Assembly (NCBI RefSeq): GCF_006345805.1
Contig: NC_042997.1
Location: forward strand, 35,278,001 to 35,342,000
Length of the DNA stretch: 64,000 bases
Source of the DNA: Octopus sinensis
Lineage: Eukaryota
Direction: 5' to 3'
Position numbers and translations under genes: made by a program. Position 1 is the first letter of the stretch, and each line of letters opens with the position of its first letter. This document shows positions 7,859 through 64,000 of this stretch, in pieces. The notes under the pieces were generated by a model, which did no database searches, was not told the DNA's origin, and saw only the letters and a program-made list of their open reading frames with translations.

Positions 7859-9228
7859 CAGGATCCATTAATGCGAATTTTTGTGGATTTTTTTTTATTG
7901 TTGAACGAATTTTTTAATTTATAAAATGTACGAATAGTTTTTGCTAGAAGATATATGTATGTATAATATATTTCTATACGTATATGTAGCATACGTGTAT
8001 GTAGGCTACCAAACACATATATGTGTTTGTTAGCCTATGAGACGTGCGCAAGAATTATAACCAAATATATGGTATATTACAATGCTATGTTAGGATCAAA
8101 TTTAAATTGCTTACACGGTATTCTGTTGTGCAAATAAGATTACACATGTTTCTATTTATTTGAGCCTTATATCCGTTATAACATCATTGCAAAGAGGGAC
8201 AAAATATTTTTCAGTCATTTACTGACAGATCACAAAACTATTACAAGTACGACAGTCAGTAACCCTTTTCTTTCGGATATAATATAGAAAAGTATTACAA
8301 TCTACATGTTGAGAGTAGAGACGTTGAGTGTGTACCTCATCACACTGCGATTACTTCTATAATCTATAAAATTGAATCAAGCGATGTCTTCACGCCCATT
8401 TGTCACTTAATACACCGATCACGTGAAACTATTGTGGTTTGATCGTGATATCAGCTGGGCTTCCTATGTTTCGGTTTTGAATCATCGCTACCGACATATA
8501 CATACATGATACATACATAAAGACAAACATGCATACATATATTACGCACATGTCTGCACAGGCACACATGCGCACACATTTTTCTATGTGTGCGCGTGTA
8601 ATTGCATAACATAATGTGCAACCTCCTCTTTGCATATTTTTCTCTACATCAATTAACATACTATACGTTTTGTAGCACCTTCAACATTATCCATTTCTTG
8701 AGTTTGATCTTCATTTCCGTTGCATTTCTTTTTACAATGCCTGGTTTCATAAGGCTCCTTTCTTAGGTTTTTAGACCCCCATTTAATCAAATATTGTAAA
8801 ATTGTTCTTCGTGCTGTTGATCAGTGACCTATGCGGTTAAAACTTTGGTCACTTGGCACTGAGCCATGCATATTGTTATAAAGATAATGAATACGATCTT
8901 ATTTCCAAAATATGCACATACACGATATCTCACTACGTTAAATTATAAAAGCATGACATCAACAATTGCGCTAATAAGAAAACGAGAATATGCAGTGCAT
9001 TCCATTCATTGCGTTTCATATAAATAATATTAGGATATCATCACTCATTGTCAAACGAATGAAGTAAAACTACCTATGATCTTGTTTAACATGAGCCATT
9101 AGAGTTACTTTTCTCTCCGTTTCGCAAAGAGAGTCATATAGATTAATTAAGGGTTCTATTGTTTATCAACATTAATGCACGTGAATTTTCTGAGAATTCC
9201 TCCATCTAAATATCCACCCACTCAACGA

Positions 9229-9320
9229 TGTATGTATGTATGTATGTATGTATGTATGTATGTATGTATGTATCTGTCTGTCTCTCCATCTATCTGTCTG
9301 TCTGTCTGTCTGCCTGCTCA

Positions 9321-9388
<68 letters not shown>

Positions 9389-9450
9389 GTCTGGCTATCT
9401 GTCTATCTGTCTGTCTGTGTATCTATGTATGCATGTTTGTATCTATCTAT
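9229..9450. repeat. (ATGT)n/(TCTG)n/(ATCT)n tetranucleotide microsatellite
   Basis: Directly visible. Confidence 0.95.
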
Positions 9451-10174
9451 CTACCAAAATACTTAGAAATTAGTGCATGTATGTTATGTGTATGTACAGA
9501 TGGGAGAAATAGAGAAAGAGGTATACTGAGAGGGAGATATAGAAAGAAATATAAGAAAAGTAAGAAACAAGGAGAATAAAGCTAGCAAATGTGTTTCTTT
9601 AAAATTTTCAAAATGTATCTTTGGAGGAATGGGTGCAACAGTGAATATATGTATCCTCAATAACGGAAAGTGAAACAAACAAGGACGGCAAAGAGAAGGA
9701 GAAGGAGGAGAGGGAGAAGGGAGGAGAAGAGATAAGTGAGGAGAAAATACAGACCATTAATGAGAAAGACCGTTGTGACTTTTGGACATAACGTGCGTAG
9801 ATACATTTAGAACTTTTGAATTTGTAGTGCAAAATTTAAGCAAGGATTAGGTTTTAAAATGTGAGACAGAAAAATGTTCCATGTAAAAATATGGATTGTA
9901 AAATGCTGAAATGCGTTAAATGTAATTAAAATTGTCATTAATCATACGATATGGATAAAGTGTTGAAATCACAAACTTTAAAAAATTTTCACGGAGTATA
10001 TTTGCTAAAGTGGGAAGAGAAAGAAATCAGAATGGATATCTATTAATGAAGGACGTTAATTTAGTATACAAGATAAGGAAAGTATAAAATTCACTTTCTT
10101 CTTATCCAAAAGTTATGTAAATTTAATATATATAGAAAGGCTGAGGAGTGGGTATTTCATAAGGAATAAGAAAG

Positions 10175-11480: not shown

Positions 11481-11511
<31 letters not shown>

Positions 11512-11717
11512 TGACCGCATTTAGACAAAAGCGCTATTCGAATGGCCACTAATTAAGGTAAGGGGGTAAAAAGTTCATAGTATAGGCGCAAGCGCGCCTG
11601 TTCATACCCACATATATATAAACAGATGAGTTTATTTTTACCTTGTTAACAATTCGAAACGTGTCGAAAGTAAAAAATATTTGATTTACACCTGCGTTAA
11701 ATTTATTTATTCATATA

Positions 11718-11767
<50 letters not shown>

Positions 11768-11805
11768 AGTGAATTGAAGAAATGGAGTTGAACGAAGATT
11801 GAACA

Positions 11806-11916
11806 GAATTCCTTTTATTGCAGTCTACACATGTTTCAAAAGCCACAATTTTCCAAATTCTGATTAAATAAGGATACCATATTGTGGCTTTCTCTTCAGG
11901 AAAAAAATAGGAATTC
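11806..11916 (-). ncRNA. Type I hammerhead ribozyme, long stem II
   Basis: Minus strand: CUGAAGA (11899-11893); stem II GAAAGCCACAAU/AUUGUGGCUUUU with 31-nt loop; GAAA; self-complementary stem III ACAUGUGU; GUA site with predicted cut between 11826 and 11825. Distal stem I GAAUUCC/GGAAUUC; proximal stem I is only 2 bp. Confidence 0.65.
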
Positions 11917-12071
11917 CGTTGGCAGAACAAAAGAGAACAGAGGCGCAGCAAAGGAATTTGAACGAGGAGGCTCTTTAAGAGCCCATGGCTGTTCAGCTCT
12001 TAAAGAGCCTCCTCGTTCAAATTGCTTTGCTGCGCCTCTTTTCTGTTTTGTTCTGCCAACGGAATTCCTAT
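11907..12071. repeat. Fold-back hairpin, 76-bp arms, 13-nt loop
   Basis: 11907-11982 vs 11996-12071: 73/76 complementary. Confidence 0.95.
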
Positions 12072-12073
12072 AT

Positions 12074-12352
12074 GAGAGATGTCATCGCAGAGTATACTCG
12101 CAGCAAGTATAGATGGGCTGGGCACGTCGCCCGGCTCACCGATAATCGGTGGACGCACGCAGTTAACGAGTGGTACCCGCGTGAGCGGAAAAGACCACCC
12201 GGAAGTTCTCCACGACGGTGGAGTGACGATTTCAAGAGGATGATTGGGATCACGTGGATGAGAAAGGCGCGATTCAGAGAGGAGTGGACAGCGCGTTGTG
12301 ACCAGCGGTGTCAAATGGACGCCTGACGGACTGGTCGGTCAAAGTGATCAAG
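12074..12352 (+). mobile_element. RTE-clade LINE 3' end
   Basis: DVIAEYTRSKYRWAGHVARLTDNRWTHAVNEWYPRERKRPPGSSPRRWSDDF...MDA* (RTE RWAGHVAR/RWxD motifs), then a short GTGATCAA-type tail. Confidence 0.85.
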
Positions 12353-12666
12353 TGATATATATATACATATATATATGTATTTATATATAGGTATATATAT
12401 ATATATATATATCATGCACACATATATATATATATGTATATATGTATATATATATATCTGAAATGATGGATGAATGTATGCGTACGCACGGGAATGTGCG
12501 GGCGACAGGTGTAGTTATCAACAGGCGCGCTTAGACATATACTATGAACTTTTTACCCCCTTACCTTAATTAGTGGCCATTCGAATAGCGCTTTTGTCTA
12601 AATGCGGTCAATAACACAGTAATTTCCTCTTGTATAACGGTAATTTTTCATAGCGTTTTTCCGATG

Positions 12667-13226: not shown

Positions 13227-14511
<1,285 letters not shown>

Positions 14512-15291: not shown

Positions 15292-15437
15292 CACATCAAT
15301 AATTTGTGCCAGTGCCACTCCGAAGGTCACATTAAGAGCCTCTGAGAAATTTGACGATGGCCGAACTTGCTTGTTGTAATTTTTCATTAAATCCCGCACC
15401 AAACGATACTCGTTTTCATCACATAAAGCTATACTTG
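15292..15437 (-). CDS. Internal coding exon (probable exon 2) of a nicotinic acetylcholine receptor subunit
   Basis: Acceptor tttcaatattcatttccAG and donor GTG|gtaagt; 146 bp, phase 1 to 0. Encodes SIALCDENEYRLVRDLMKNYNKQVRPSSNFSEALNVTFGVALAQIIDV, with the nAChR ExRLxxDLxxNY..RP helix, the N-x-S sequon and QIIDV ending at the conserved intron before DEKNQ. Resembles the alpha7/9/10-like branch; subtype not assignable from one exon. Confidence 0.93.
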
Positions 15438-18054
15438 CTGGAAATGAATATTGAAAGAAAAATAAAACCGTTAATACTGCAGTTTAATATATAAAGCAAA
15501 TTACAATATTCACTTTCATATGCACACATTTCTAGGGATAAATTTTAATTGTATTGTGCAAATGAATTTTATATCACGTATGGATTTTCTACTATTGTTA
15601 GATCTCCATTGAGAATAGAACACTAATCATTTCTGGAAGGGTACAGAATACTTTAAGATACTTTTCTTCGTTTCTTTTATTTGATCAGTTTTCTATAATC
15701 GAAATTTAAATATACGTTAACTTTCTGAAAAAATAACATCAATACAATTTATAGTTTTTCTGGTGTATACACATAAGAAAATGAAATTCATTAAATCATT
15801 TATAATTTTTTATTATTCTGCTTCGACCATAATAAAAGTGCTGTTTCGTTTCAGAATTAGAAATGAGTATTATATCTACGTATATGAAATCATAGCATCA
15901 TAATAACATTTTTTTGTAAGTTTAAATTACATGATAAAAATAATGAGCGATTCAAGAGAAGTACAAAAAATAATAATAATGCGTGAGAACAGATCGATAC
16001 AAAATTTACAAAGTTTCTTTAGCTGACATTGTTACTATTCGCATAGACAACAGCGAATGCTTGTTATATGTTGGGTAAAAATACCGACTTCAGAATCGTC
16101 TGCAAAACGGAAAATGTTACAGCATACTAAGAAGTGATAAGGTTATAAGTACCTTAGGAAGTTTCGAATATGAAAAATAGCTCAATAGTTTCAATGTACA
16201 CTAAAGCATATCCATTTTGAAGAAAACTGAGAACATTCTTTTGTAAGGCTTGGATCATAAGTATATTGCCATATGGATTTACTATTATGTCAACAGTATT
16301 TCATATCTACTTTTTCAGCAGTATCGTTCTTATTGAAATATTTACGTTATAATATTCTGCTCATTGATGTTCGTATTCTGCAACGTTACTTGTTCTTAAC
16401 TGACAAAATTAACATGCATCTCGCAGTTGAAATCCAATTTTGATTTTGAAATCAAGTTTCTGGTTTCGTACTTCACAAGCATATAATTTCCTATACTGAA
16501 AGTTTGACATACATACGTATTTCATTTGAATACGAAAATGGCGGACATACAATGCACGCCATTTTCTGTAACATAAATTTACCTAGCTGGTAAAAATCAG
16601 TTATTTATAGTGACTTTTCTTTGTTCTGCATTTGATATGTATTTGATATTAAACATCGGATAATTAGAAAATGAAAAATTATATTGCATTCCTATAAAAT
16701 TTAGTTAATAGTAAATTACATTTGCCGTTAAGAAATATATGTAATTCGAATAAGAAATTCATTTGTGCAAATGTTGTACAACGTGGGTTAAAATATTAAA
16801 GCATATTTGGCACCAGAATAATCATTACAGTGCATAGAATGAAACTTTGCCTTGAATGAATGTAAGTAAGACACTATCGAGTAATAAATTTAGCAAGTTA
16901 TATAGTGTACGTTATTGAAAAACTTTATAAGAGAGACAATTTTAAAGGTTTTTATTGTATTTTCGTTTATATTAATTGTCATACTATTTATTTTAATATC
17001 TCCTGATGAATATTTCCTGATTAGTCGCTTTCATCTAGACCTTTTGCAATATTGATTTTGTAATTTGGTTTTTCATCAAGATGAAACTAATAAATAAATA
17101 AATCTTAATAAAACAAAGACAGGGAAAAAGAATTATTATAAAGAAAAGATTTGATGTTATTTGTTTTCTCTCATCTATTTAATCGCATCAATAAATACAG
17201 GATATTGTTTGACCTTCATTGCAATCCATAGAAACTATTACTTGAAGCTCAAACATTACAAAGTTTTAATAAATAGCTTTTGTCCCCCGTGACATATTTA
17301 AACTTTTTCTCCTCGAAGCAAATTTAATTCCATAGTGAAATGATTAATGGTGAACAGTCACTTGGCTTGAAGCAAATAATAATTTTCTGTTGGCAAACGT
17401 AGAACCGGAAGTTTCGACGTTTCTGCTTCCTTTGCCACGATAAATTTCTACAATATTTGAGCATCGTTTGTTGAAGCAGAAAGGCAGGAAACTCGGACAC
17501 CTGCTACGCTGTCCATTCTGTCGAATGCCGTGTACGACGATTCTACTACATAATGATATTGTGTTAGTATTATGTTCAATTTATCTTGATATTTTGATTG
17601 CTACCCATGTTGTTTTCCTTTTTGTTAGTTTACTTTAGACAATTGCTTTTACATACGGCTTTATATATTCTGTAAATATTAGTGAGATAATCATTTTACG
17701 TGATTGTTATCAATGAATTTATAAATACTCTCAGCATCACACTATTCTTTTCTTGTAACTGATTCGCTTATTTAAATGAAATATACTATTAAAAGTTTCG
17801 AGTGCTGCTTCATCTAAACTTTATAAGGATGTTTTCAAGAAAATCCGATTAACGCATCAGTCTCTGTGATACCGATATTTTCGTCTTCTCTGAAGATTAT
17901 ATATAAAAGTTAGTTGTAGTGAATATATGCATTGATACCTTACTTCTGTTATCATCCAAATGTTGCTTTCAAGTATTTTCATTGAATGAACTGTATATAA
18001 ATGTTGTCGTATATAAACAAATGCTTTGATGTTTTCCAATATCTCTCCCTCACT

Positions 18055-18063
18055 AATCTATCA

Positions 18064-18134
<71 letters not shown>

Positions 18135-18214
18135 ATCTATCTATCTATCTATCTGTCTGTCTGTCTGTCTATCTATATATATATATATATATATCTATCT
18201 ATCTATCTATCTAC

Positions 18215-18259
<45 letters not shown>

Positions 18260-18382
18260 CTATCTATCTACCTATAAATCTATCTATCTGTCTGTCTATC
18301 TGCCCATCTATGTATCGGTCTATGTATACCTACCTACCTACCTACCTACCTACCTACCTACCTATATATATATATATATATA
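18055..18382. repeat. (ATCT)n/(ACCT)n/(TA)n microsatellite
   Basis: Directly visible. Confidence 0.95.
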
Positions 18383-19060
18383 TGCAAACTTATTACTGAA
18401 ACACAGATGTTGTGTTGCGAATCATGTTTCACGCCACTGCATTCGGTTCTCGCTTATATTGTTATCATAAAATTGTACATGGCCCATATATTTAATGATA
18501 ATGTTAGTAATAAAGTCGACAGTTGTGTGACTTAGCATAATCGCTTAGAGAAATCTCTTCCACGTGCAGAATAACATTCGACGAATCTCAAATAAATATT
18601 CATACTGGAACAAAATGCAACTTTTTTCTTCATTATTGTCCTTCCATCTATTGGGTAACAATAGCAAGCAAGCAAATATAGGATTGGCAATATCTGTCTC
18701 ATTACTGATGTAGGTCAGCAACAAATTTCTTAATAATTTGAAACATGTTGAGCAAATTATTATCAGAGGCTTTCTGTTAGCAAGCACAATCGTATTTATC
18801 ACAAACTTATGATGTCCGAATCGCTGGCGTAGTGAGGTTATCATAGTATAGTTCGAATTGATTGCGAAGATTTATACATTCGATAATATAAATTTTGACA
18901 AAATGTGTGTTTTAAAACAACAAAATGCAAAAGAAGATAATAAGAAATGTTCATTAATAATCAATAATAAGAACTGCAGTATTATCGAGGGGTTGATACA
19001 GAAGTCATCATTATCACCAATAACTTCATCTACAACCGCATCAATAATAGTAAAATCAAC

Positions 19061-45060: not shown

Positions 45061-45379
45061 TAATTACCCGTAGACACTTTACGTGCACAAATATACACTG
45101 ACACAAAATACGCCAAATTCACTCCAACAAAATACACCAAATGACTTCTCGAAAACCCACTCAAGCGTACTAAAATCAAAGGACACCCACCCAGCAAAAT
45201 GAATAGCCAGACAATTACTGGGAAAAACGCAAGAAAGACTTACTCTAACCATTCTTCTCAGAAAAGTGAAAAGGGAAACCATCAAGCAGTGAAATATTTT
45301 ATGTTTCTCTTATACTGAAACTAGCAATTACAACTGTTATAATATTTTAGCATATATTTGTGTTGTAATATTTATGGAT

Positions 45380-45407
45380 GGATCTATCTATCTATCTATC
45401 TATCTAC

Positions 45408-45495
<88 letters not shown>

Positions 45496-45518
45496 ATATT
45501 TATCTATCTATCTACTTA

Positions 45519-45560
<42 letters not shown>

Positions 45561-45561
45561 C

Positions 45562-45601
<40 letters not shown>

Positions 45602-45608
45602 ATATATA

Positions 45609-45679
<71 letters not shown>

Positions 45680-45735
45680 TTATCTATCTATCTATTTATC
45701 TATCTATCTACCAACCTACCTACCTACCTACCAAC
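45380..45735. repeat. (ATCT)n/(ACCT)n microsatellite
   Basis: Directly visible. Confidence 0.95.
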
Positions 45736-46160
45736 CTAATGTGATTGCTGAGAAATAACAAGGAAATTATATTGATTGCCATCTGTAATATATTCTTGTT
45801 GATGACATCGGAACAATTGCCATTCATTGAATGAATGTGAAAAGGAATTGCTCTGAATTATATGACGGCCAATAGAATTCCGATTTGGATATAGCCGTTC
45901 CCAAAACACCTGAAATTTGCCATTTATCTCTTTTTGGTTTTTAAATGTCTATCTTATCTCTGCAGTTCATGAGACACTAGGCTACACAATATTTTTTTAA
46001 TTGATATAGGATAACCCATAGGGTGCACTACATATCAATTATGCAAAATATTTTGCGGATAAAATAAAACAAATATATCAAATTTTATTCGTTATAAAGA
46101 CTGCATTATATAGGATTAATGTTATAAATATAAAATAATGGAATGTGTAATCATATATAC

Positions 46161-46396: not shown

Positions 46397-46565
46397 CATA
46401 TATACGACAGGCTTCTTTCAGTTTCCGTCTACCAAATCCACTCACAAGGCATTGGTCGGCCCGGGGTTATAGTAGAACATACTTGTGTAAGATGCCACGC
46501 AGTGGGACTGAACACGGAACCATGTGGTTTGTTAGCAAGCTACTTACCACACAGCCACTCCTGCG

Positions 46566-46567
<2 letters not shown>
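46161..46567 (-). mobile_element. SINE family B
   Basis: Full reverse complement of the 19061-type element. Confidence 0.85.
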
Positions 46568-46637
<70 letters not shown>

Positions 46638-46786
46638 GGGAATTATCTCCCTTTGCAGGTTAAAGGACACCGTGATGGTGTCAAGCCTATCTGGCGACGT
46701 CGATGTTCGCCTGGGGCTAAATGCAACAGTAACACCCCCACACCCTGCCCTGTCCCTAGCCATATTCAGATGGCTTTAGTCCCTTA

Positions 46787-46836
<50 letters not shown>

Positions 46837-46932
46837 GACTGAAGATTGAAGGCTTCGAGTGTCCCGTCGGCTTTTTTGTATCGTCTTCTAAATGTTTTGC
46901 GTTCTTGTCCCAGTTTGTGTTTTTTTCACATT

Positions 46933-46972
<40 letters not shown>

Positions 46973-46975
<3 letters not shown>

Positions 46976-47408
46976 CAATTAAGGACAACTACTTAATAAG
47001 GAAAACTTAACAAGAATTGTCAGGTAGATAGCGTAAAAACCTCATAAGAGAAAAATTTCGAAAATAATTATTTCTTATTGAACATATTAATTTATATATA
47101 GAGGGCATTATACATACATGCCAGGAGGCATTCTACATACACGCCATACGCTAAGAGGGACAATCAGTCATTTCTACCAAAATATTACTAATCCCACCGA
47201 ATGCAATTTTTCAAAGAAAGACATTTAAAAATATATAGACCTGTATCACAGTGATTTATACTTACGTAATCATCAGCAGGCCTGATATACTATAAAATTG
47301 CATTCGGTGGGATTAGTAATATTTTGGTAGAAATGACTGATTGTCCCTCTTAGCGTATGGCGTGTATGTAGAATGCCTCCTGGCATGTATGTATAATGCC
47401 CTCTATAT

Positions 47409-47416
<8 letters not shown>
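46973..47416 (-). mobile_element. Permuted copy of the 52-kb HHR unit with a 123-bp perfect fold-back
   Basis: Minus-strand order: inverted tail, HHR, segment C, segment A. Arms 47088-47210 / 47294-47416 are identical. HHR 47237-47283 lacks G12. Confidence 0.85.
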
Positions 47417-47454
<38 letters not shown>

Positions 47455-47457
<3 letters not shown>

Positions 47458-47800
47458 GCTGGATGAATAAATTGTCGTCGAAATTACGCAAAAACTGAAA
47501 ATAACACTGACATCTCATTTTAACAGATATATTTATTATAATTAAATAAAAATATGTCAGGGGTGGTGTGGTCACAGAAATTGTGCAAGCCGCCGTACCT
47601 TCGTAATCACCAACTCTTTCCGAATCCTCTGCACTTTCTTCAAACTCAAACTCTCTGAAATATTCGTTTTGGAGTTTCCTGCGCGAATACCAAGCAGTAC
47701 AGTAAGTCGTTTCCACATTTCTGGCTGAGAAAACCGCGTTATGGTGCTGTCTTTCTCGCAGACGGTGCCCAACTGACCTTACATTATTGATTAGTAGAAA
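47455..47800 (-). mobile_element. Tc1/mariner (maT-like) internally deleted remnant
   Basis: FSQPEMWKRLTVLLGIRAGNSKTNISESL..VQRIRKEL..GDYEGTAA N-terminus joined to a TA-flanked TIR-like end (CAGGCTGGATGAATAAATTG). Confidence 0.55.
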
Positions 47801-47901
47801 AATCAAAGAGAATCAGTGCACATATGGGAAATTAAAAGTATAAGATGGCGACAACCTACCCATCGCAACCTGCATATATATAATATATATATATATATAT
47901 C

Positions 47902-48240: not shown

Positions 48241-48807
48241 CACTCTGGTACCGGAACGCCAAGCTAATTAGTAATGTAAGAATTACTTGAATGAATCTAT
48301 ATTTTCAATTCAATGTAGATTTTTTTCTAGATTCTTTAACGAATATATAAAACGCAGACAAGATATGATTCTATTTTCAACATAGCAAATCACGTCAGGG
48401 TAAAATCTACAAATATTTCTTATTTTATTCATATAACTTTAGGTATATTAAGAATTATACAGGATATGTTATTGAGTAGGATACATTACATTTCAGGATA
48501 CGATTCGTGGTATCACTACATTCGATTTGGTAAGCAATATATAAATGGAAATCATTATTTAAAAAAGCCAGAGGTAAAAGAAAATGTGGAAGAGACACTC
48601 AGTGGAACACATATGTTTTAACTATGACAAGCTGTAAAGATAACTGTTTATATATATGTTCTGCTTTGTTTTTGATTTAGAGTTAATCATATTCGACCAG
48701 TGAATACTGTTTCAATGTGGGATTTACAATTATCTAATAACCAAGCTAATAGTTTGTGTACAAATACTACAAAATGTAGTCATTTTTAATTCTGGAAACT
48801 ATATATA

Positions 48808-48838
<31 letters not shown>

Positions 48839-48874
48839 GTATATATAGGAAAAAGCAACAAGAATGGATTAAAA

Positions 48875-48962
48875 TCTCGGTACGATCGTTTCGTACGAGG
48901 ACATCTTTAATAAGCTACAAAAAATGCAGTGAATACAGATGGCTCGTACTCGTCAGCCGAAA
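48875..48962 (-). ncRNA. Type I hammerhead ribozyme, extended stem II
   Basis: Stem I UUUCGG/CCGAGA; CUGACGA (48956-48950); stem II GUACGAG/CUCGUAC plus CAUCU/AGAUG; GAAA; perfect palindrome ACGAUCGU as stem III; GUA site with cut between 48881 and 48880. Confidence 0.85.
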
Positions 48963-49059
48963 AACCATCAGAGAATTCCCAAACATCAAAAGGGGTAGAT
49001 ACAAAAGAGGTTGTAAGTTTAACTGCATTGAATTCACTTGAATCTCAATTACTTAACCG

Positions 49060-49097
<38 letters not shown>

Positions 49098-52048: not shown

Positions 52049-52534
52049 TATATATAAGTTAATATGTTCAATAAGAAATAATTATTTTCGAAATTTTTTC
52101 TCTTATGAGGTTTTCACGCTATCTACCTGACAATTTCTTGTTAAGTTTTCCTTATTAAGTAGTTGTCCTTAATTGCTAAATTTTTATTCCGAAAAAACTT
52201 TTCCTTTCCCGAAATGCAATTCGTAAAAGTCTGACATTTACAGGATGTAATATATGTAAACTCACCCATGTGCTTCGTTGATGTTGATCAGTTAGCTGAT
52301 CGGCTTAAGCGAGGCAGGGTCGTTTATGTATGATACATCCAGGCCTGCTGATGAATACGTAAGTATGAAATCACGGTGATACAGGTCTATATTTTTTAAA
52401 TGTCTTACTTTGAAAAATTGCATTCGGTGGGATTAGTAATATTTTTGGTAGAAATGACTAATTGTCCCTCTTAGCGTGTGGCATGTATGTATAATGCCAT
52501 CTGGCATGTATGTATAATGCCCTCTATATATAAA

Positions 52535-52536: not shown

Positions 52537-52609
<73 letters not shown>

Positions 52610-52967
52610 ATTTTATTACTGAGTATGTCAAGTGCATATATTTTTATTATTTGGGATATTCTCGCAGTTAATCTATGGGGAATGCAGTTCTTTACACAAA
52701 TCCGGGAAAACAGACAAGAAGTAAGATTTCCTTATAAGTTATCTTCCCTGATATGTATGAACACATGCTTTGAAGGCTTGTATAGCCTGGTTTTCCTTCG
52801 TGTATTCTCATCCTAAATGGAGATGAGTACCAACTGTACCATGCGCTTCAGAATTGTAACGAGACGCTGCAAGAAATCATTGGTAGCCTTGTTGTCCCAC
52901 AAATAAAGATTACTTATCTACTAATCCATGTGTTGGGTACTCATTCTCACTGTTTCATATCAGAGGT

Positions 52968-53003
<36 letters not shown>

Positions 53004-53006
53004 TGG

Positions 53007-53049
<43 letters not shown>

Positions 53050-53054
<5 letters not shown>

Positions 53055-53610
53055 CTAATGTAGGATAACATTTTTTTTCGGGAAAAAAATTTTATCAATG
53101 GCCAGCATATCAAAAAATACCTTTAAAGGTAAAATTTATAAATAATTTACAAAATAAAGGCAAAAGAAAAATTCTAATGCCAAATATACCGAAAAAAAAC
53201 CCAAAAATTGTCAATAACCATTATAATTTATGCGTCTCGAAACAAATCGATAGACATTTCTAAAAAATCCGTTATTACCGTATCGAGACGCATAAATTAT
53301 AATGGTTATTGACAATTTTTGTCTTTTTTTCGGCATATTTGGCATTAGAATTTTTCTTTTGCCCTTATTTTGCCCTTATTTTGCGTCCCCTAGACAGTCT
53401 GTGGTTTGTGTTTATGATTCTCGACCCCATGTCGAATTTATCGATTTTTTTTCAGAACTGGGGGAACTTTTCAAAATTTTCGCTGCGTTAGTTTTGAATT
53501 ATGACATTGGGCTATGTGTGTGTCAAGTTTCATCAGAATCGGTTGAAAGCCGTGGTCAGGGTGAGGGTACAAGCAAACAGACACACAGAAGCACGCACAG
53601 ACAAACTGCC

Positions 53611-53650
<40 letters not shown>
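53050..53650 (+). mobile_element. Non-autonomous Helitron-like (Lep1/HINE-type) element with internal long hairpin
   Basis: 3' motif AAGTTTCATCAGAATCGG...ACAGACAAAC..TTTATATATA; ~90-bp inverted arms 53150-53240 / 53283-53372. Confidence 0.5.
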
Positions 53651-53889: not shown

Positions 53890-56660
53890 TATTCCCCATA
53901 CAGAAATTTTACACACACCACAAGCATTAACAACCATAGATTCCCACACACACACAACGATCGGAGGCAACAATACCACCACTCCCCCGACCAAATAGCA
54001 CACAACCTCACAGACAACTCTTACAAACAAAATTACACCCAACATTTTTTAGCCAGGGACCAGGGACACCAGGACACAGGCTGGAACCTAGTAATAAGGA
54101 AAAAACGAAGATAATCAATCTTTCAACCAAACCTCTTTCTAACATAAAAATTGACATCCTCACAAAAGGGCTCAAATTTACACCAACTCCACACGCAGAC
54201 AAACCTAATGAACTCAAGGATAATATAACAGAATTTTGCAGAAAATTAAGACTAGCAGAAGCATCAAACAGTTTCAATACTGAAGATGAATCACTAGTCA
54301 AGAACAAAAGTGAACACATCCCACACAGAGGAAGAAATAAAGATCTTGACGAATTCTGTAACCACATTGAGAACTTCCCCTACCATACTATACATAAACA
54401 GAAAGCTAACCCAATTTTAACACTACACAATGGAAATAACTGATAGAACTCCAAAATGATGAAGATATAACCATTAAGGAAGCGGACAAGGGAAATGCAG
54501 TTGTAATAATGGATACATCATACTACAGAAATCTTGTAATTTCCTTGCTTGATGAAGACCTACATTATGAAAAAATTACCAACTACACCCCCAAAAATAA
54601 TGAAAACTCTATCTTCACTAATTAAAACCCATGAAAAGGAACTGACAACCAAAGAGATTGATTTCCTAACAAACTTTAAATGCAAACCTAGCCTTTTCTA
54701 TGGTCTGCCAAAAATTCATAAAAGTCAAATATAAATGAAACCATTAAAAAATCACCAAAGACATACATACACACACCTAATCCGGGGGACCTAAAACTAC
54801 GACCCATTGTAGCTGGCCCAACCTGTGAAACACACAGACTAAGTCTACTTATGGACATCCTCTTGAAACCCTTCTTAAACATATCGATAGCCATATCAGA
54901 GATGACTTAGATATGTTAAACCACCTTCCAAAAAAAAACCAAGGAAGAAACAATCCTGGTTTCATTTGATGTAGTCAACTTGTATACCAGTATACCTCAT
55001 AATTATGGACTGGAGGCAATACAATTCTGGTTAGACCAATTTCCGGAAGAAATACCAAAAAGGATCAGTAAGGAATTCATTACTAAATCAATTGAATTCA
55101 TCCTACACAATAACCACTTCATGTTTGACAATACATTTTACCGTCAAAAATCCGGAATTGCTATGGGTACAAGGGCAGCACCAGTCATTGCGAACTTAAC
55201 AATGGGATACATGGAAATAATCATTTACCAGGAATCTCTATCAATCTTTGGAAACTCCCTCTCTCAATACATAAAAGAGAATTGGAAACGATTCCTAGAC
55301 GATTGTTTCATTCTCTGGAATGAAAACATAGATAAACTCCTAAAATTTAAAAACCTATTGAACAGCATAAACCCAAACAGTTCACAATGGAATACAACCA
55401 AAAGGAGCTCCCGTTTTTGGATATACTAATTAAAAAAATTAACCTTAAAATAGAAACAGACATTTTTTTACAAAGCCACAGACGCCAAAAACATACCTTC
55501 TTTTTAATTCATGCCACCCAAGACACACTAAAAAAACATCCCCTTCAACCTTGCAAGAAGGATATGCACAATAGTGTCAGAACAAAATACCAGGAACTTT
55601 AGACTGCAAGAACTCAAAAACACCCTAATTGACAGACATTACCCAGCTCAACTCATAGAGGATGGGATCAGACGTGCAACAGAAATCAACATAGAATCTT
55701 TAAGAAAAGTTCAACACAACAACACACCTTCCCCGAAAATACTACCTTACATATCTACATACAACCCCAGAAACAAAGAAGCCTTCACCATCATCACCCA
55801 GAATTTACCAATACTTCATAAAAACCAAATTAAAGGAAATTCTAAGCATACACCAAATCATTAAAAGCTACAAACAGCCTAAATCACTTAAAAGATTCTC
55901 ACAAAGCAAATTGTCTTCTAAAATTACGGATGCAAAAGTAAAAAAATGTGGTAGATCGAACTGTGCAACTGTCCTAACCTATTGGAAGGATCAGAATTCT
56001 TCTTTAAAGAGGGACAGAAATTTAAGATCAAATCTAACTTTACTTGTGCCTCTGAAAACATAATTTATGTTATTAAATGACTATCACTCAGGCGCAGATG
56101 CACACTGCATCGACAACAGATTGCATTCCCAGAATATAGAATGATACCTTTTAGTGAGCACATTGAGAAATGCGCAAAGCAACTACTGCCACAATTTTTA
56201 ATCTTCCCATTTTACCAATGTGCTTTCGGATCATCAACACAAATGAGACTGAACAAGGAAACATTCTTCATTGAAAAGTACAAACCCAGACTCAACCATC
56301 CGAACATACTGACACAGATAAATTAACAAGGAAAAGGGAAAAAAATTTTTTAAGCGATTATCTCCCCTACACCGGAAAAAATCACTCACTACCTCCCCTT
56401 ATTTAGAAATCTCCTGGAAATAAAAACAACGATAATTCCATGCAATATAAACATAACGTCACAAGAAATTTGAAAAGCTACACGCGAAACCGGTAATTTC
56501 TTTAAAAATTTTTAAATTATGTCATTTTAAGGAAAGGGAAAAAAATTTTTCCAATATTCTCCAGACATGTTGACACAAATATATATATTTTTTAACATTT
56601 AACCCTTCTGTCGTTTTTTCACACTTTACTATTTTCTTATATATTCACCCACATGCTTTA
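53890..56660 (+). mobile_element. Near full-length Penelope-like element (RT plus GIY-YIG), frameshifted
   Basis: KGLKFTPTP, IKEADKGNAVV, FYGLPKIHK, RPIVAG, SFDVVNLYTSIPH, GIAMGTRAAP, WKRFLDDCF, ELPFLD, IIYVIK, ETFFIEKYKPRLN. Confidence 0.92.
56463..56502 (+). ncRNA. Decayed minimal type I hammerhead in the PLE 3' pseudo-LTR
   Basis: Stem I AAGAAAT/ATTTCTT (7 bp); core TTGAAAA (two changes from CTGAAGA); 1-bp stem II; GAAA; ACCGGT palindrome; GUA site. Confidence 0.7.
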
Positions 56661-56676
56661 CCAAACAACTTTCTTA

Positions 56677-56747
<71 letters not shown>

Positions 56748-62392: not shown

Positions 62393-63690
62393 ATTCATAA
62401 ATGAACCCACGTTCACACACATATAAGGTTTTGCATCGGTTTATGCATATCCCATTGTTTTTGCTTTCCAAAGTATTATATGCATTATGCAGATCTCGAC
62501 CGGCTTTCCACTCACGACAACTTGACAGCTTCTAATTTTATTCCACTATCAGATTTCAGATCAACGAAAGAAACTGTAATGTTCTCGCCAAGAAGTAGAC
62601 ATTTGGAAAATCTATCCAAACATGCTGCTTAAATTATGAATAAATTACATAAAATTAAATTGCCGAACATTGAATTTTGCACGCAATTTTCGTGAATATA
62701 TAGATTTGCTTCGTACAACATTAAGTCTCCAGTGACATCTATTCTACTTCCATATTACTACTTGTTTTTGTCCATCCATCAAATACGCTATTCGTGTTCG
62801 TATTTAGCTTTTGTATATCTAATTATACACAATCACCCTTCCTACACCTATACAGACTCCTCCTCTCCCAAACGCATACACATACGCACGCACACTCATG
62901 CCCAGAGATATAAGTAAATAAGGATATATACAAATATATATGAATATTTAAATATATATCTGTATACACACACGCACACACATATATATGAGAGGAAGGA
63001 ACGAGACTATATGTGTGTGTGTGTTTGTACGTGAGCGTGGTTGTAATAATTTTAGCATGACATTTGTTTTAATAAGCGCATTGCCAATTTTCATGTATTT
63101 ACTCCTTTACCGATAAGTTACTTTACTTTAATGATCTCGATGCGATAGCAGGAATCTTTGACTTCGTTGTTGTTTGAACACAGACCGTAAACAGGTAAAC
63201 AATTATTAAAAGGTATTTTGTCAGACATTCTATCAACGCTCGCAGGTCTTTGCCCTATGATTCATGATGCGATTTTTATACAAGTGTATATGGATGCATG
63301 GATTATTGTGCAATTTATTCATATAATGAAAATAGTAATGCAATACGAGAGTATTGCTTTCCAGTAAAGAATAGCCCGTCAGTCGAGTGCACTGGCATAG
63401 ATGTGGCAACATTTGAAATATTGTCGAGGTATATGTGGCTGATGAGGATAAATCAAATATATGTTGGCAGACGTATTTTGAAGAATCTGAAACCGGTACC
63501 ACATTATCCATTTCTAGGTATTTCATTTTTCAGATGTTCTTCCTAGAGGTAAGACAATTTGTTTCATGTTTGTTGCACACACGCACATTTACTAGTACAT
63601 ACGCAGTGAAGCTATACGTTAGCGTCGTATTTATTACGTTCGCTATTTTCCAGTAAATATCGGTACTTCGTTGTGCCATTTATTTACTTT

Positions 63691-63752
<62 letters not shown>

Positions 63753-64000
63753 ATATATATATATGTAGTTGAATGCATTTAATCTAGTTTTTGTCTTAAT
63801 TGTATTAAGTATTATAGCCATACCGATGCCATATAGCTGACTGTAGTTAGATTTCGGCTCAGTATATATTTGACCTGCAAAAAGTCGTAAAGAATTTACT
63901 TACCCTCTTTCCCCTCTCCTTCCCTAGCCGCAACATTTTAGATATAGAGCAATGTAGTTTCACAATTCAGCTTTTATAATTCTATATGTCACGCGTGCAT

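What the first reader, a model, noticed from the sequence alone, without database searches (positions are those of the whole stretch)
11806..12071. Sense-strand intronic hammerhead in the nAChR pre-mRNA whose stem I competes with a 76-bp hairpin
Seen: on the receptor's strand, 3.4 kb downstream of the exon, is an intact HHR core (CUGAAGA, 12-bp stem II, GAAA, GUA site). The 5' strand of its distal stem I (11910-11916) is also the base of the 76-bp hairpin transcribed just before it (12071-11907), so the two folds are mutually exclusive. Proximal stem I is only 2 bp, so activity may be low. Inference: a hairpin-gated self-cleavage site in a neuronal receptor intron. It could be silenced by the hairpin (domesticated or neutralised), or be conditionally active if ADAR editing or protein binding opens the hairpin, affecting co-transcriptional splicing or termination.
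Basis: partly seen in the sequence, partly recalled or inferred. Interest (0 to 1): 0.8.

Follow-up and report, generated by a model that had tools for sequence, protein, structure and literature searches.

The report
Decayed transposon hammerhead in octopus intron
The hammerhead-ribozyme motif and the long hairpin next to it are really there. They look like the worn remains of a small mobile element that landed in a (TA)n repeat inside a receptor gene intron, not a regulatory switch built by the host.

Summary
On the minus strand lie CUGAAGA (11899-11893), a 12-bp helix II, GAAA, a 2-bp helix III with a tetraloop, a GUA cleavage site (11826/11825) and a weak helix I. The distal half of helix I shares its 5' strand with the base of a 76-bp-arm hairpin.

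The motif is not chance. The same descriptor with permuted core letters averages 0.007 hits per window, and the true core gives 3-4.

It is not special to this intron either. Three more hammerheads lie in the window on both strands, along with a degenerate Penelope-like element. An Octopus sinensis locus carries an inverted pair of similar hammerhead elements. These units mostly sit between (TA)n tracts, and this one abuts a 5'-truncated LINE fragment.

The copy looks decayed. It has G-U at 10.1/11.1 and only 2 bp of proximal helix I. It gets no hit from Rfam's hammerhead model or from a local octopus model, though a neighbouring copy scores 21-22 bits with both. With the hairpin present, the ribozyme fold is 8.5-20 kcal/mol above the minimum free energy.

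Best reading: an inactive relic of a Penelope/retrozyme-type hammerhead element. The hairpin is most likely an insertion-associated inverted duplication. This is an ordinary member of a known kind.

The parts
11713..11763 (.). (TA)n tract bounding the composite on the left
11764..11801 (-). 3' tail of the hammerhead-bearing unit, running into the (TA)n tract
   Evidence: A weak colinear match to the 3' tail of copy B is not significant on its own.
11802..11813 (-). 3' strand of the distal ('closing') helix I. It is also a direct repeat (AACrGAATTCCT, 1 mismatch) of 12058-12069.
   Evidence: The base rate for such a 12-mer repeat 150-400 nt away is 0.3%.
11815..11825 (-). 3' strand of proximal and middle helix I. 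G11825 would be the 5' nucleotide of the 3' cleavage product.
11826..11828 (-). GUA cleavage triplet; predicted cleavage between 11826 and 11825
11827..11834 (-). Helix III: A15.1-U16.1 and C15.2-G16.2 with an AUGU loop. ACAUGUGU is self-complementary only with two G-U pairs.
11834..11837 (-). Core box GAAA (G12 A13 A14 A15.1)
11838..11892 (-). Helix II domain: 12 bp with G10.1-U11.1 at the base and a 31-nt partly paired loop
   Evidence: P(pair 11888-11842) is 0.9985.
11893..11899 (-). Core box CUGAAGA (C3-A9)
11900..11920 (-). 5' strand of helix I. Positions 11907-11920 are also the base of the hairpin's 3' arm.
   Evidence: The 30 nt upstream of C3 resemble those of copy B (p about 0.007).
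11907..11982 (-). Hairpin 3' arm (in transcription order), tentatively the hammerhead element's own upstream sequence
   Evidence: (I2)
11983..11995 (-). Hairpin loop, 13 nt
11996..12071 (-). Hairpin 5' arm, an inverted duplicate of 11907-11982 (96%)
   Evidence: Peptides translated from the arm are not LINE-like.
12072..12354 (+). 5'-truncated 3' end of an APE-type LINE: the last ~85 codons of ORF2, stop codon at 12324-12326, and a short 3' UTR
   Evidence: A 93% identical copy in O. sinensis (L006) has no hairpin or hammerhead.
12355..12457 (.). (TA)n-rich tract bounding the composite on the right

Best explanation
The motif is a decayed, single copy of a short hammerhead-bearing retroelement. 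It belongs to the kind associated with Penelope-like elements and 'non-LTR retrozymes'. The element inserted, in minus orientation, into a (TA)n microsatellite in the intron after a Cys-loop receptor exon.

Its first ~76 nt are present twice in inverted orientation. This gives the 76-bp hairpin, as happens in the tandem and inverted insertion structures typical of these elements. A 5'-truncated LINE fragment of a family that also ends in (TA)n abuts the hairpin head-to-head.

In the parent element the hammerhead would process multimeric element transcripts. Here there is one copy with weak helices I and III, G-U at 10.1/11.1, and a hairpin that captures the 5' strand of the closing helix I. 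It is therefore predicted to cleave the pre-mRNA poorly or not at all and to have no host function.

Shown: the anatomy, non-randomness, the TE context, other hammerheads nearby and in O. sinensis, and the fold energetics.
Inferred: family membership, the origin of the hairpin, and inactivity.
For: 1. Non-randomness. The strict descriptor gives 3 hits in the window. 719 permuted-core decoys average 0.007, and 20 Mb of Markov sequence gives 1. The relaxed descriptor gives 4 hits against a decoy mean of 0.07.

2. Other copies. B (minus strand, C3 48956) scores 21.4 bits with Rfam Hammerhead_1, E 0.0035. B and this copy share an architecture: a 55-57-nt helix II domain, then GAAAC-NNNN-GUA, 74 and 76 nt from C3 to A17.

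3. A degenerate element with RT and C-terminal GIY-YIG-like motifs lies at ~53950-56330 on the plus strand. It has FYGLPKIHK, ADKG and RFLDD motifs, RVT_1 at 30 bits, and its 3' end runs into (TA)n. Its best hits are O. sinensis and O. bimaculoides proteins.

4. Three of the 4 hammerheads lie in (TA)n-bounded gaps of <=700 nt. Such gaps cover only 8% of the sequence.

5. O. sinensis locus L005 has a hammerhead element as an inverted pair. The arms are 304 nt and 97% complementary, flanked by (TA)n. This is the same geometry as here.

6. The LINE identity is verified. A second copy of that LINE 3' end lies between (TA)n tracts without any hairpin or hammerhead.

7. Decay and inactivity. There is no hammerhead hit from Rfam or from a model built on the L005 copy, while B passes both. 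The ribozyme fold is 8.5-20 kcal/mol above the MFE with the hairpin, and 6.1 without it.

8. Literature. Penelope-like elements carry type I or minimal hammerheads, mostly found as dispersed single motifs and sometimes as pairs on opposite strands. They form tandem or inverted structures and prefer microsatellites (PMC4209133, PMC8557442). About 43% of Xenopus retrozyme copies lie in introns (10.64898/2026.07.22.740005).
Against: - No second copy of this unit or of the hairpin arms was found in 168 kb of octopus DNA, nor in two metagenome scans.
- Similarity to copy B outside the core is only suggestive: p about 0.03 with a fair mask, and p about 0.007 for the 30 nt upstream of the core.
- The copy fails both covariance models, so 'hammerhead-derived' rests on a descriptor match and on context.
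- The Penelope-like element in the window has a different helix III type (GAAACCGGUA). No autonomous parent was identified, and GIY-YIG was not detected by Pfam.
- The origin of the hairpin is not resolved.
- Inactivity is predicted from nearest-neighbour energies, which ignore tertiary structure, proteins and editing.
Confidence: 0.6

Rival explanations
1. Retrozyme unit with an integral rod. The ~255-nt stretch 12069-11815 (hairpin plus hammerhead) is a slightly more-than-unit-length copy of a retrozyme-like element. In the circular or multimeric RNA of that element, the 76-bp hairpin is simply the distal extension of helix I. On this reading the 'competition' exists only in this 1.05-mer genomic copy.
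For: - A 12-nt direct repeat sits exactly at the outer end of the hairpin and after the hammerhead (11802-11813 / 12058-12069, spacing 256, base rate 0.3%).
- The unit length of 255 nt and GC of 41% fit non-LTR retrozymes (150-450 bp, low GC, highly self-paired circles; PMC7229834).
- Circular and tandem folds keep the hairpin as one arm of a three-way junction with helix II.
Against: - No tandem array exists, and there is only one hammerhead.
- Copy B, the most similar unit, is 211 nt and has no such hairpin.
- A near-perfect palindrome is not typical of published retrozyme rods (my own knowledge).
Confidence: 0.15
2. Unrelated hairpin. The palindrome is an independent insertion or a by-product of the LINE insertion. 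It could be a foldback MITE with a TA target duplication, or a snap-back duplication at the 5' end of the LINE cDNA. It happens to lie beside a hammerhead relic and to mimic its closing helix.
For: - The palindrome is bounded by TA on both sides, and the LINE homology starts at its edge.
- tblastn alignments to LINE proteins run weakly into the right arm.
- A mariner relic is nearby.
Against: - Peptides translated from the arm score no better than shuffles against a profile of 67 LINE tails.
- The mariner TIRs are unrelated to the arms.
- No other copy of the arms was found in 168 kb.
- This reading needs two coincidences: the 12-bp complement or repeat at 11802-11813, and the resemblance of GGAATTC...T-run...C to the region upstream of copy B (p about 0.007).
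Confidence: 0.15
3. This is a host-relevant self-cleavage site gated by the hairpin. It is silenced by default and becomes active when ADAR editing or protein binding opens the hairpin, so it affects splicing or termination of the receptor pre-mRNA.
For: - The motif is on the sense strand of the receptor exon.
- The hairpin adds about 14 kcal/mol to the cost of the full ribozyme fold.
- A 76-bp near-perfect duplex is a plausible ADAR substrate (general knowledge).
Against: - All features are explained by transposon insertion.
- Similar motifs occur on both strands in the same window.
- The helices are degenerate and both covariance models are failed.
- A few edits would not offset 8.5-20 kcal/mol.
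- No conservation data are available.
Confidence: 0.05
4. Chance motif. The core boxes flank an unrelated 12-bp inverted repeat by accident.
For: - Both covariance models give no hit.
- Helix I has only 2 contiguous bp, the minimum of my descriptor. At the relaxed setting the decoys average 0.07 hits per window.
Against: - The strict decoy rate is 0.007 per window.
- The motif shares its architecture with copy B.
- Its location is (TA)n-bounded, like A, B and the L005 pair.
- It has a 12-bp closing helix.
Confidence: 0.05

Closest known systems
Minimal / type I hammerheads of Penelope-like elements (Cervera & De la Pena 2014, PMC4209133; Craig et al. 2021, PMC8557442)
   Same: - Type I layout with a long helix II, a short helix I and a tiny helix III that tends to be palindromic.
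- Mostly dispersed single motifs from truncated elements, sometimes pairs on opposite strands.
- Inverted and tandem insertion structures, with a preference for microsatellites including (TA)n.
- Low activity as monomers.
- A Penelope-like element lies in the same window.
   Different: - No autonomous parent was identified, and no pLTR context.
- G10.1-U11.1 replaces the highly conserved G-C pair.
- There is no unpaired base between A9 and 10.1.
- The helix II domain is much longer (55 nt).
- Helix III has 2 bp plus a tetraloop rather than 0-1 bp.
Metazoan non-LTR retrozymes (Cervera & de la Pena 2020, PMC7229834; Li et al. 2026 preprint 10.64898/2026.07.22.740005)
   Same: - Type I hammerhead with a 2-bp helix III and tetraloop, as in invertebrate retrozymes.
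- Unit of ~210-255 nt, GC 41%, strongly self-paired.
- Monomer copies are common in introns.
- Co-occurrence with Penelope-like elements.
   Different: - Not in a tandem array.
- No evidence of circular RNA.
- The loop 1-loop 2 contacts of canonical copies are not recognisable.
Conserved intronic hammerheads of amniotes (Rfam Hammerhead_HH9 and HH10; De la Pena & Garcia-Robles 2010, cited in PMC4209133; the details are from my own knowledge)
   Same: A sense-strand hammerhead inside an intron of a protein-coding gene, thought to derive from retroelements.
   Different: Those are ultraconserved, canonical and active in vitro. This one is degenerate, gets no Rfam match, has untested conservation, and sits in obvious transposon debris.
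Schistosoma Sm-alpha SINE-like hammerhead repeats and newt satellite 2 hammerheads (background cited in PMC4209133 and PMC7229834)
   Same: A short non-autonomous repeat carrying a type I hammerhead with a weak helix III that works best as a dimer.
   Different: Those are high-copy families with canonical helices I (6 bp) and II (4 bp) and loop-loop contacts.

Membership tests
Hammerhead ribozyme, type I | Conserved core: C3 U4 G5 A6 N7 G8 A9, G12 A13 A14, A15.1-U16.1, H17 | tested here: met
   CUGAAGA at 11899-11893, GAAA at 11837-11834, U11827, A11826.
Hammerhead ribozyme, type I | Three helices meeting at the core | tested here: inconclusive
   Helix II has 12 bp. Helix III has 2 bp plus a tetraloop. 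Helix I has only 2 contiguous bp at the core, then interrupted pairs and a 12-bp distal helix that the hairpin competes for.
Hammerhead ribozyme, type I | G10.1-C11.1 pair at the base of helix II | tested here: not met
   The pair is G11892-U11838. It is one C-to-U change at a CpG away from G-C (inference).
Hammerhead ribozyme, type I | Match to the Rfam covariance model RF00163 (gathering score 34 bits) | tested here: not met
   No hammerhead family is listed even at E<=10 on 131 nt. As a positive control, copy B in the same window scores 21.4 bits, E 0.0035. Copy A also gets no hit.
Hammerhead ribozyme, type I | Loop 1-loop 2 tertiary contacts | not testable with these tools
   The geometry (2-bp proximal helix I, 12-bp helix II) does not resemble canonical copies, by inspection only.
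Hammerhead ribozyme, type I | Site-specific self-cleavage | not testable with these tools
   Only energies could be computed. The ribozyme fold is 6.1 kcal/mol above the MFE without the hairpin and 8.5-20.2 with it.
Local octopus hammerhead family (model R1, built from the L005 copy) | Significant score with a covariance model built from an O. sinensis hammerhead element | tested here: not met
   R1 finds a degenerate copy in L006 (42.5 bits) and B (22.1 bits, E 0.11). It gives no hammerhead alignment at 11780-11940 even with filters off.
Penelope-like-element hammerheads / non-LTR retrozymes | Tandem repeats of 150-450 bp, or position in the terminal repeats of a Penelope-like element | tested here: not met
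   This is a single copy. Only a 12-nt direct repeat 256 nt apart is present, and no RT/GIY-YIG ORF is adjacent.
Penelope-like-element hammerheads / non-LTR retrozymes | Palindromic helix III / loop 3 | tested here: inconclusive
   ACAUGUGU pairs with itself only through two G-U pairs. Copies B (ACGAUCGU), D (ACCGGU) and L005 (ACAAUUGU) are perfect palindromes.
Penelope-like-element hammerheads / non-LTR retrozymes | Multi-copy family with covarying helices in the same genome | tested here: inconclusive
   Hammerheads are enriched in the window. No close copy of this unit was found in 168 kb. Similarity to copy B is p about 0.03.
Penelope-like-element hammerheads / non-LTR retrozymes | Co-occurrence with Penelope-like elements and insertion into microsatellites | tested here: met
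   A degenerate element lies at ~53950-56330 and ends in (TA)n. The unit lies in a 628-nt gap between (TA)n tracts.
Conserved intronic hammerheads (HH9/HH10 type) | Conservation in orthologous introns across species | not tested
   The orthologous octopus gene could not be retrieved. The exon peptide found only fragments at 67-81% identity.

The most novel reading that the evidence does not exclude
The sense-strand hammerhead is kept off by the 76-bp hairpin. It becomes able to cleave the receptor pre-mRNA when heavy A-to-I editing, which is abundant in octopus neurons, or a helicase weakens the hairpin base and frees the closing helix I. That would make it an editing-dependent self-cleaving switch made from transposon parts.
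Probability: 0.03. Interest if true: 0.75.

Novelty: new member of a known kind. Interest (0 to 1): 0.25.

Why it matters
If the reading is right, the finding itself is ordinary. It is one more decayed retroelement hammerhead in an intron, with no sign of host function.

There are three modest points of value.
- Octopus genomes carry a diverse set of type I hammerhead elements that sit in (TA)n microsatellites. I found no description of these in the searchable literature.
- Rfam at gathering thresholds misses all of them. Descriptor searches with permuted-core decoys are a useful complement.
- The inverted-duplication structures of these elements create long intronic duplexes that may matter for RNA editing, whatever the ribozyme does.

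Tried and rejected
**Searches that found nothing**
- Rfam on the whole window at gathering scores, and at E<=10 on 901 nt and 131 nt. No hammerhead here, only spurious miRNA-like hits on the hairpin.
- Self-BLAST of the hammerhead segment, hairpin and LINE tail against the window. No second copy.
- Exact look-ups of two window ORFs and a word-indexed protein search with the 113-aa ORF.
- The receptor exon peptide found only fragments at 67-81% identity, none from octopus. Locus L001 shares no DNA similarity with the window. The orthologous intron was therefore not obtained.

**Ideas tested and rejected**
- The hairpin as a mariner-derived MITE. The TIRs of the nearby mariner relic are unrelated.
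- The hairpin arm as LINE coding sequence. tblastn alignments ran into it, but a profile of 67 LINE tails does not support this.
- The hammerhead or hairpin as part of the LINE. A second LINE copy lacks both.

**Correction of my own error**
- The 'core-masked' similarity of units B and C (p 0.001 or less) was inflated because masked N matched N. With a neutral mask, p is about 0.03.

**Other**
- MAFFT could not align the hammerheads in register. I therefore built the model from the two identical L005 copies.
- No tRNA genes are present in the window.

Full report
**1. What is in the sequence**

On the minus strand the region reads: GGAAUUCC-UA-U7-C, CUGAAGA (11899-11893), helix II, GAAA (11837-11834), helix III, A17 at 11826, then GACUGCAAUAAAAGGAAUUCUGUU.
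- Helix II is 12 bp (11892-11881 / 11849-11838). It starts with a G-U pair and encloses 31 nt.
- Helix III is 2 bp (A11834-U11827, C11833-G11828) with an AUGU loop.
- Helix I has 2 bp at the core, a 1x4 internal loop, four A-U pairs broken by two mismatches, and a 12-bp distal helix (11920-11909 / 11802-11813).

Immediately 5' lies a hairpin with 76-nt arms (11907-11982 / 11996-12071), 96% complementary, with a 13-nt loop.

The receptor exon is 15437-15292 on the minus strand (AG acceptor, G|GTAAGT donor), and it matches Neur_chan_LBD at E 6.5e-7. No other ligand-binding-domain exon is recognisable in the window. The site therefore lies about 3.4 kb into a probable intron of more than 15 kb.

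**2. Is it more than chance?**

Rfam finds no hammerhead here at any threshold. I therefore wrote a descriptor: both core boxes, helix II of at least 4 bp, helix III of at least 2 bp, and helix I of at least 2 bp.
- It hits three sites in the window. It gives one hit in 20 Mb of first-order Markov sequence.
- 719 descriptors with the core letters permuted but the same helices average 0.007 hits in the real window, and never more than 1.
- A relaxed version gives four true hits against a decoy mean of 0.07.

Hammerhead motifs are therefore strongly enriched in this DNA, and this site is very unlikely to be an accident.

**3. The other hammerheads**

| Copy | Strand, C3 | Sequence layout | Helix I |
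|---|---|---|---|
| A | +, 52348 | CUGAUGA-AUAC-GUAA-GUAU-GAAA, 4-bp helix III | 7 bp |
| B | -, 48956 | CUGACGA, 7-bp helix II with G10.1-C11.1 around 43 nt, GAAAC-GAUC-GUA (perfect palindrome ACGAUCGU) | 6 bp |
| D | +, 63439 | CUGAUGA-GGAU-35 nt-AUCU-GAAA-CCGG-UA | 6 bp |

B is recognised by Rfam Hammerhead_1 at 21.4 bits, E 0.0035 on the local stretch. B and the finding share an unusual build: a 55-57-nt helix II domain followed by GAAAC-NNNN-GUA, 76 and 74 nt from C3 to A17. The 30 nt upstream of the two cores also resemble each other (GGAATTC..CT.AT..TTTTTC, p about 0.007). Over the whole units, with core positions made neutral, the similarity is only suggestive (p about 0.03). Searches overstated it because masked letters matched each other.

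**4. Context**

The finding sits in a 628-nt segment between (TA)n tracts (11713-11763 and 12355-12457). B sits in a 221-nt gap and A in a 493-nt gap. Gaps of this size (<=700 nt) cover only 8% of the non-(TA)n sequence.

The right part of the segment (12072-12354, plus strand) is the 3' end of an APE-type LINE. A full HMMER scan gave 1685 hits, located at the extreme C-terminus of 840-975-aa proteins with Exo_endo_phos and RVT_1 domains. A profile of 67 such tails aligns from about 12054 onward.

The window also holds a frameshifted Penelope-like element at ~53950-56330 on the plus strand.
- Motifs: ADKG, FYGLPKIHK, RFLDD and a GIY-YIG-like C-terminus.
- RVT_1 scores 30 bits on the stitched translation.
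- Its 3' UTR ends in (TA)n and carries a GAAACCGGUA remnant.
- Its best protein matches are from Octopus sinensis (79%) and O. bimaculoides (74%). This confirms an octopus origin.

**5. Related loci**

I fetched five loci, 104 kb in total, from O. sinensis and O. bimaculoides.
- L005 carries a hammerhead element as an inverted pair, with C3 at +2611 and -2238. The arms are 304 nt and 97% complementary, flanked by (TA)n. The ribozyme is CUGACGA-GCUA-43 nt-UAGC-GAAAC-AAUU-GUC, with a 7-bp helix I and a perfectly palindromic helix III. This is the head-to-head geometry seen at the finding, and the 'dual motifs on opposite strands' described for Penelope-like elements (PMC4209133).
- L006 carries a 93% identical copy of the LINE 3' end. 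It is also 5'-truncated and also lies between (TA)n tracts, with no hairpin or hammerhead. The hairpin and hammerhead are therefore not parts of the LINE.
- A covariance model built from the L005 copy finds a core-mutated relative in L006 (42.5 bits) and B (22.1 bits). It gives no hammerhead alignment at the finding, even with filters off.

**6. Origin of the hairpin**

Three origins remain possible.

(a) Inverted duplication of the element's own 5' part, as in L005 and in published Penelope-type insertion structures (PMC8557442). I favour this one for three reasons. The arm next to the core resembles the region upstream of copy B. The closing helix and direct repeat at 11802-11813 are unlikely by chance (0.3% base rate). 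The arm peptides are not LINE-like.

(b) An integral rod of a ~255-nt retrozyme-like unit, present here as a 1.05-mer. In circular or tandem RNA the hairpin would simply extend helix I.

(c) An unrelated foldback element or a LINE snap-back product. The TA bounds, the position at the LINE edge and the weak tblastn extensions allow this. The nearby mariner's TIRs do not match the arms.

**7. How it most likely behaves**

Nearest-neighbour energies are as follows.

| Context | Fold | Energy (kcal/mol) |
|---|---|---|
| With hairpin, 296 nt | MFE | -153.8 |
| With hairpin | Hammerhead helices, hairpin intact | -145.3 |
| With hairpin | Full hammerhead with distal helix I | -133.6 |
| Without hairpin | Gap between hammerhead fold and MFE | 6.1 |
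| Copy B | Gap between hammerhead fold and MFE | 6.4 |

In the hairpin context, the proximal helix I has probability about 1e-5. The hairpin is transcribed first and costs the full fold about 14 kcal/mol.

Several other features also point to little or no cleavage of the pre-mRNA:
- G-U at 10.1/11.1;
- a 2-bp proximal helix I;
- a 2-bp helix III;
- no recognisable loop-loop contacts;
- no second copy with which to form a dimer.

Both departures from consensus (U11.1, and the loop U that breaks the ACACGUGU palindrome) are single C-to-U changes at CpG sites. This fits decay, but it is an inference, and CpG depletion in the window is mild (o/e 0.88).

**8. Comparison with known systems and verdict**

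The closest known systems are the type I and minimal hammerheads of Penelope-like elements and the non-LTR retrozymes derived from them (PMC4209133, PMC7229834, PMC8557442, 10.64898/2026.07.22.740005). Dispersed monomer copies, many of them in introns, are the norm for these families.

The finding meets the core definition of a hammerhead. It fails the G10.1-C11.1 feature and two covariance-model tests, and it is not in a tandem array. I file it as a degenerate relative, not a bona fide active member.

A literature search returned no paper describing octopus hammerheads. The octopus elements are therefore new members of a known kind. The idea of a hairpin-gated regulatory ribozyme in the receptor pre-mRNA is not excluded, but no evidence obtained here supports it.

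Noticed in passing
window 48873-48964 (-): Hammerhead B: CUGACGA, 7-bp helix II around 43 nt, GAAAC-GAUC-GUA, 6-bp helix I. Rfam Hammerhead_1 scores 21.4 bits, below the gathering score. It lies in a 221-nt gap between (TA)n tracts 48800-48838 and 49060-49088.
   Followed up: yes
window 52341-52388 (+): Hammerhead A: CUGAUGA-AUAC-GUAA-GUAU-GAAA, 4-bp helix III, 7-bp helix I. It looks canonical but has A10.1-U11.1 and gets no Rfam hit. It lies in a 493-nt gap between (TA)n tracts, with a 23-nt tandem duplication at 52479-52524.
   Followed up: partly
window 63431-63506 (+): Hammerhead D, with the Penelope-type minimal helix III (ACCGGU), G-U at 10.1/11.1 and a 6-bp helix I. It lies about 190 nt upstream of (TA)n 63695-63764. 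The spacing matches that of the GAAACCGGUA remnant in the Penelope-like element's 3' UTR.
   Followed up: partly
window ~53950-56678 (+): Frameshifted Penelope-like retroelement: RT motifs, a GIY-YIG-like C-terminus ending at 56326, and a 3' UTR ending in (TA)n 56679-56743. A hammerhead remnant at 56476-56485 has lost its 5' core box. Best matches are O. sinensis and O. bimaculoides proteins.
   Followed up: partly
window 11509-11612 and 12510-12613: A 104-nt inverted repeat (93%) brackets the whole (TA)n / hammerhead / LINE composite. It could be two inverted copies of a short repeat, or the ends of a foldback element whose (TA)n centre received the insertions. No other copy is in the window, and no tRNA-like part was found.
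   Followed up: partly
window ~13228-14400 (+): Degenerate mariner-type transposon: HTH_48 at E 1e-6, a DDE-region ORF, and TIRs TCAATTGAGTAAAAAGTAAGCAACGGTTTGAA / rc. It lies between the receptor exon and the finding.
   Followed up: partly
L005 1850-2896 (O. sinensis CM016879.1): A complex inverted structure of a hammerhead element: arms 1978-2281 / 2568-2871 (304 nt, 97%) and 1936-2040 / 2274-2378 (105 nt, 98%), flanked by (TA)n. The two hammerheads are identical and point outward.
   Followed up: partly
L006 12148-12227 (+) and 16742-17001 (-) (O. sinensis CM016865.1): A degenerate relative of the L005 hammerhead with a mutated core (CCGAUGA), 42.5 bits with model R1. Separately, a 93% identical 5'-truncated copy of the LINE 3' end lies between (TA)n tracts.
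   Followed up: partly
window, whole: 44 merged (TA)n tracts lie in the 64 kb, and several other short (TA)n-bounded gaps exist (for example 46397-47882 and 52598-53613). They may hold further small retroelement insertions. Long (TATC)n arrays lie at ~9200-9470, 18000-18400 and 45360-45750.
   Followed up: no
window 15292-15437 (-): This is the only Cys-loop receptor exon recognisable in the window. The annotated Octopus proteins in the searched database did not match it; the best hits are anonymous fragments at 77-81% identity. The exon may be missing from current gene models.
   Followed up: partly
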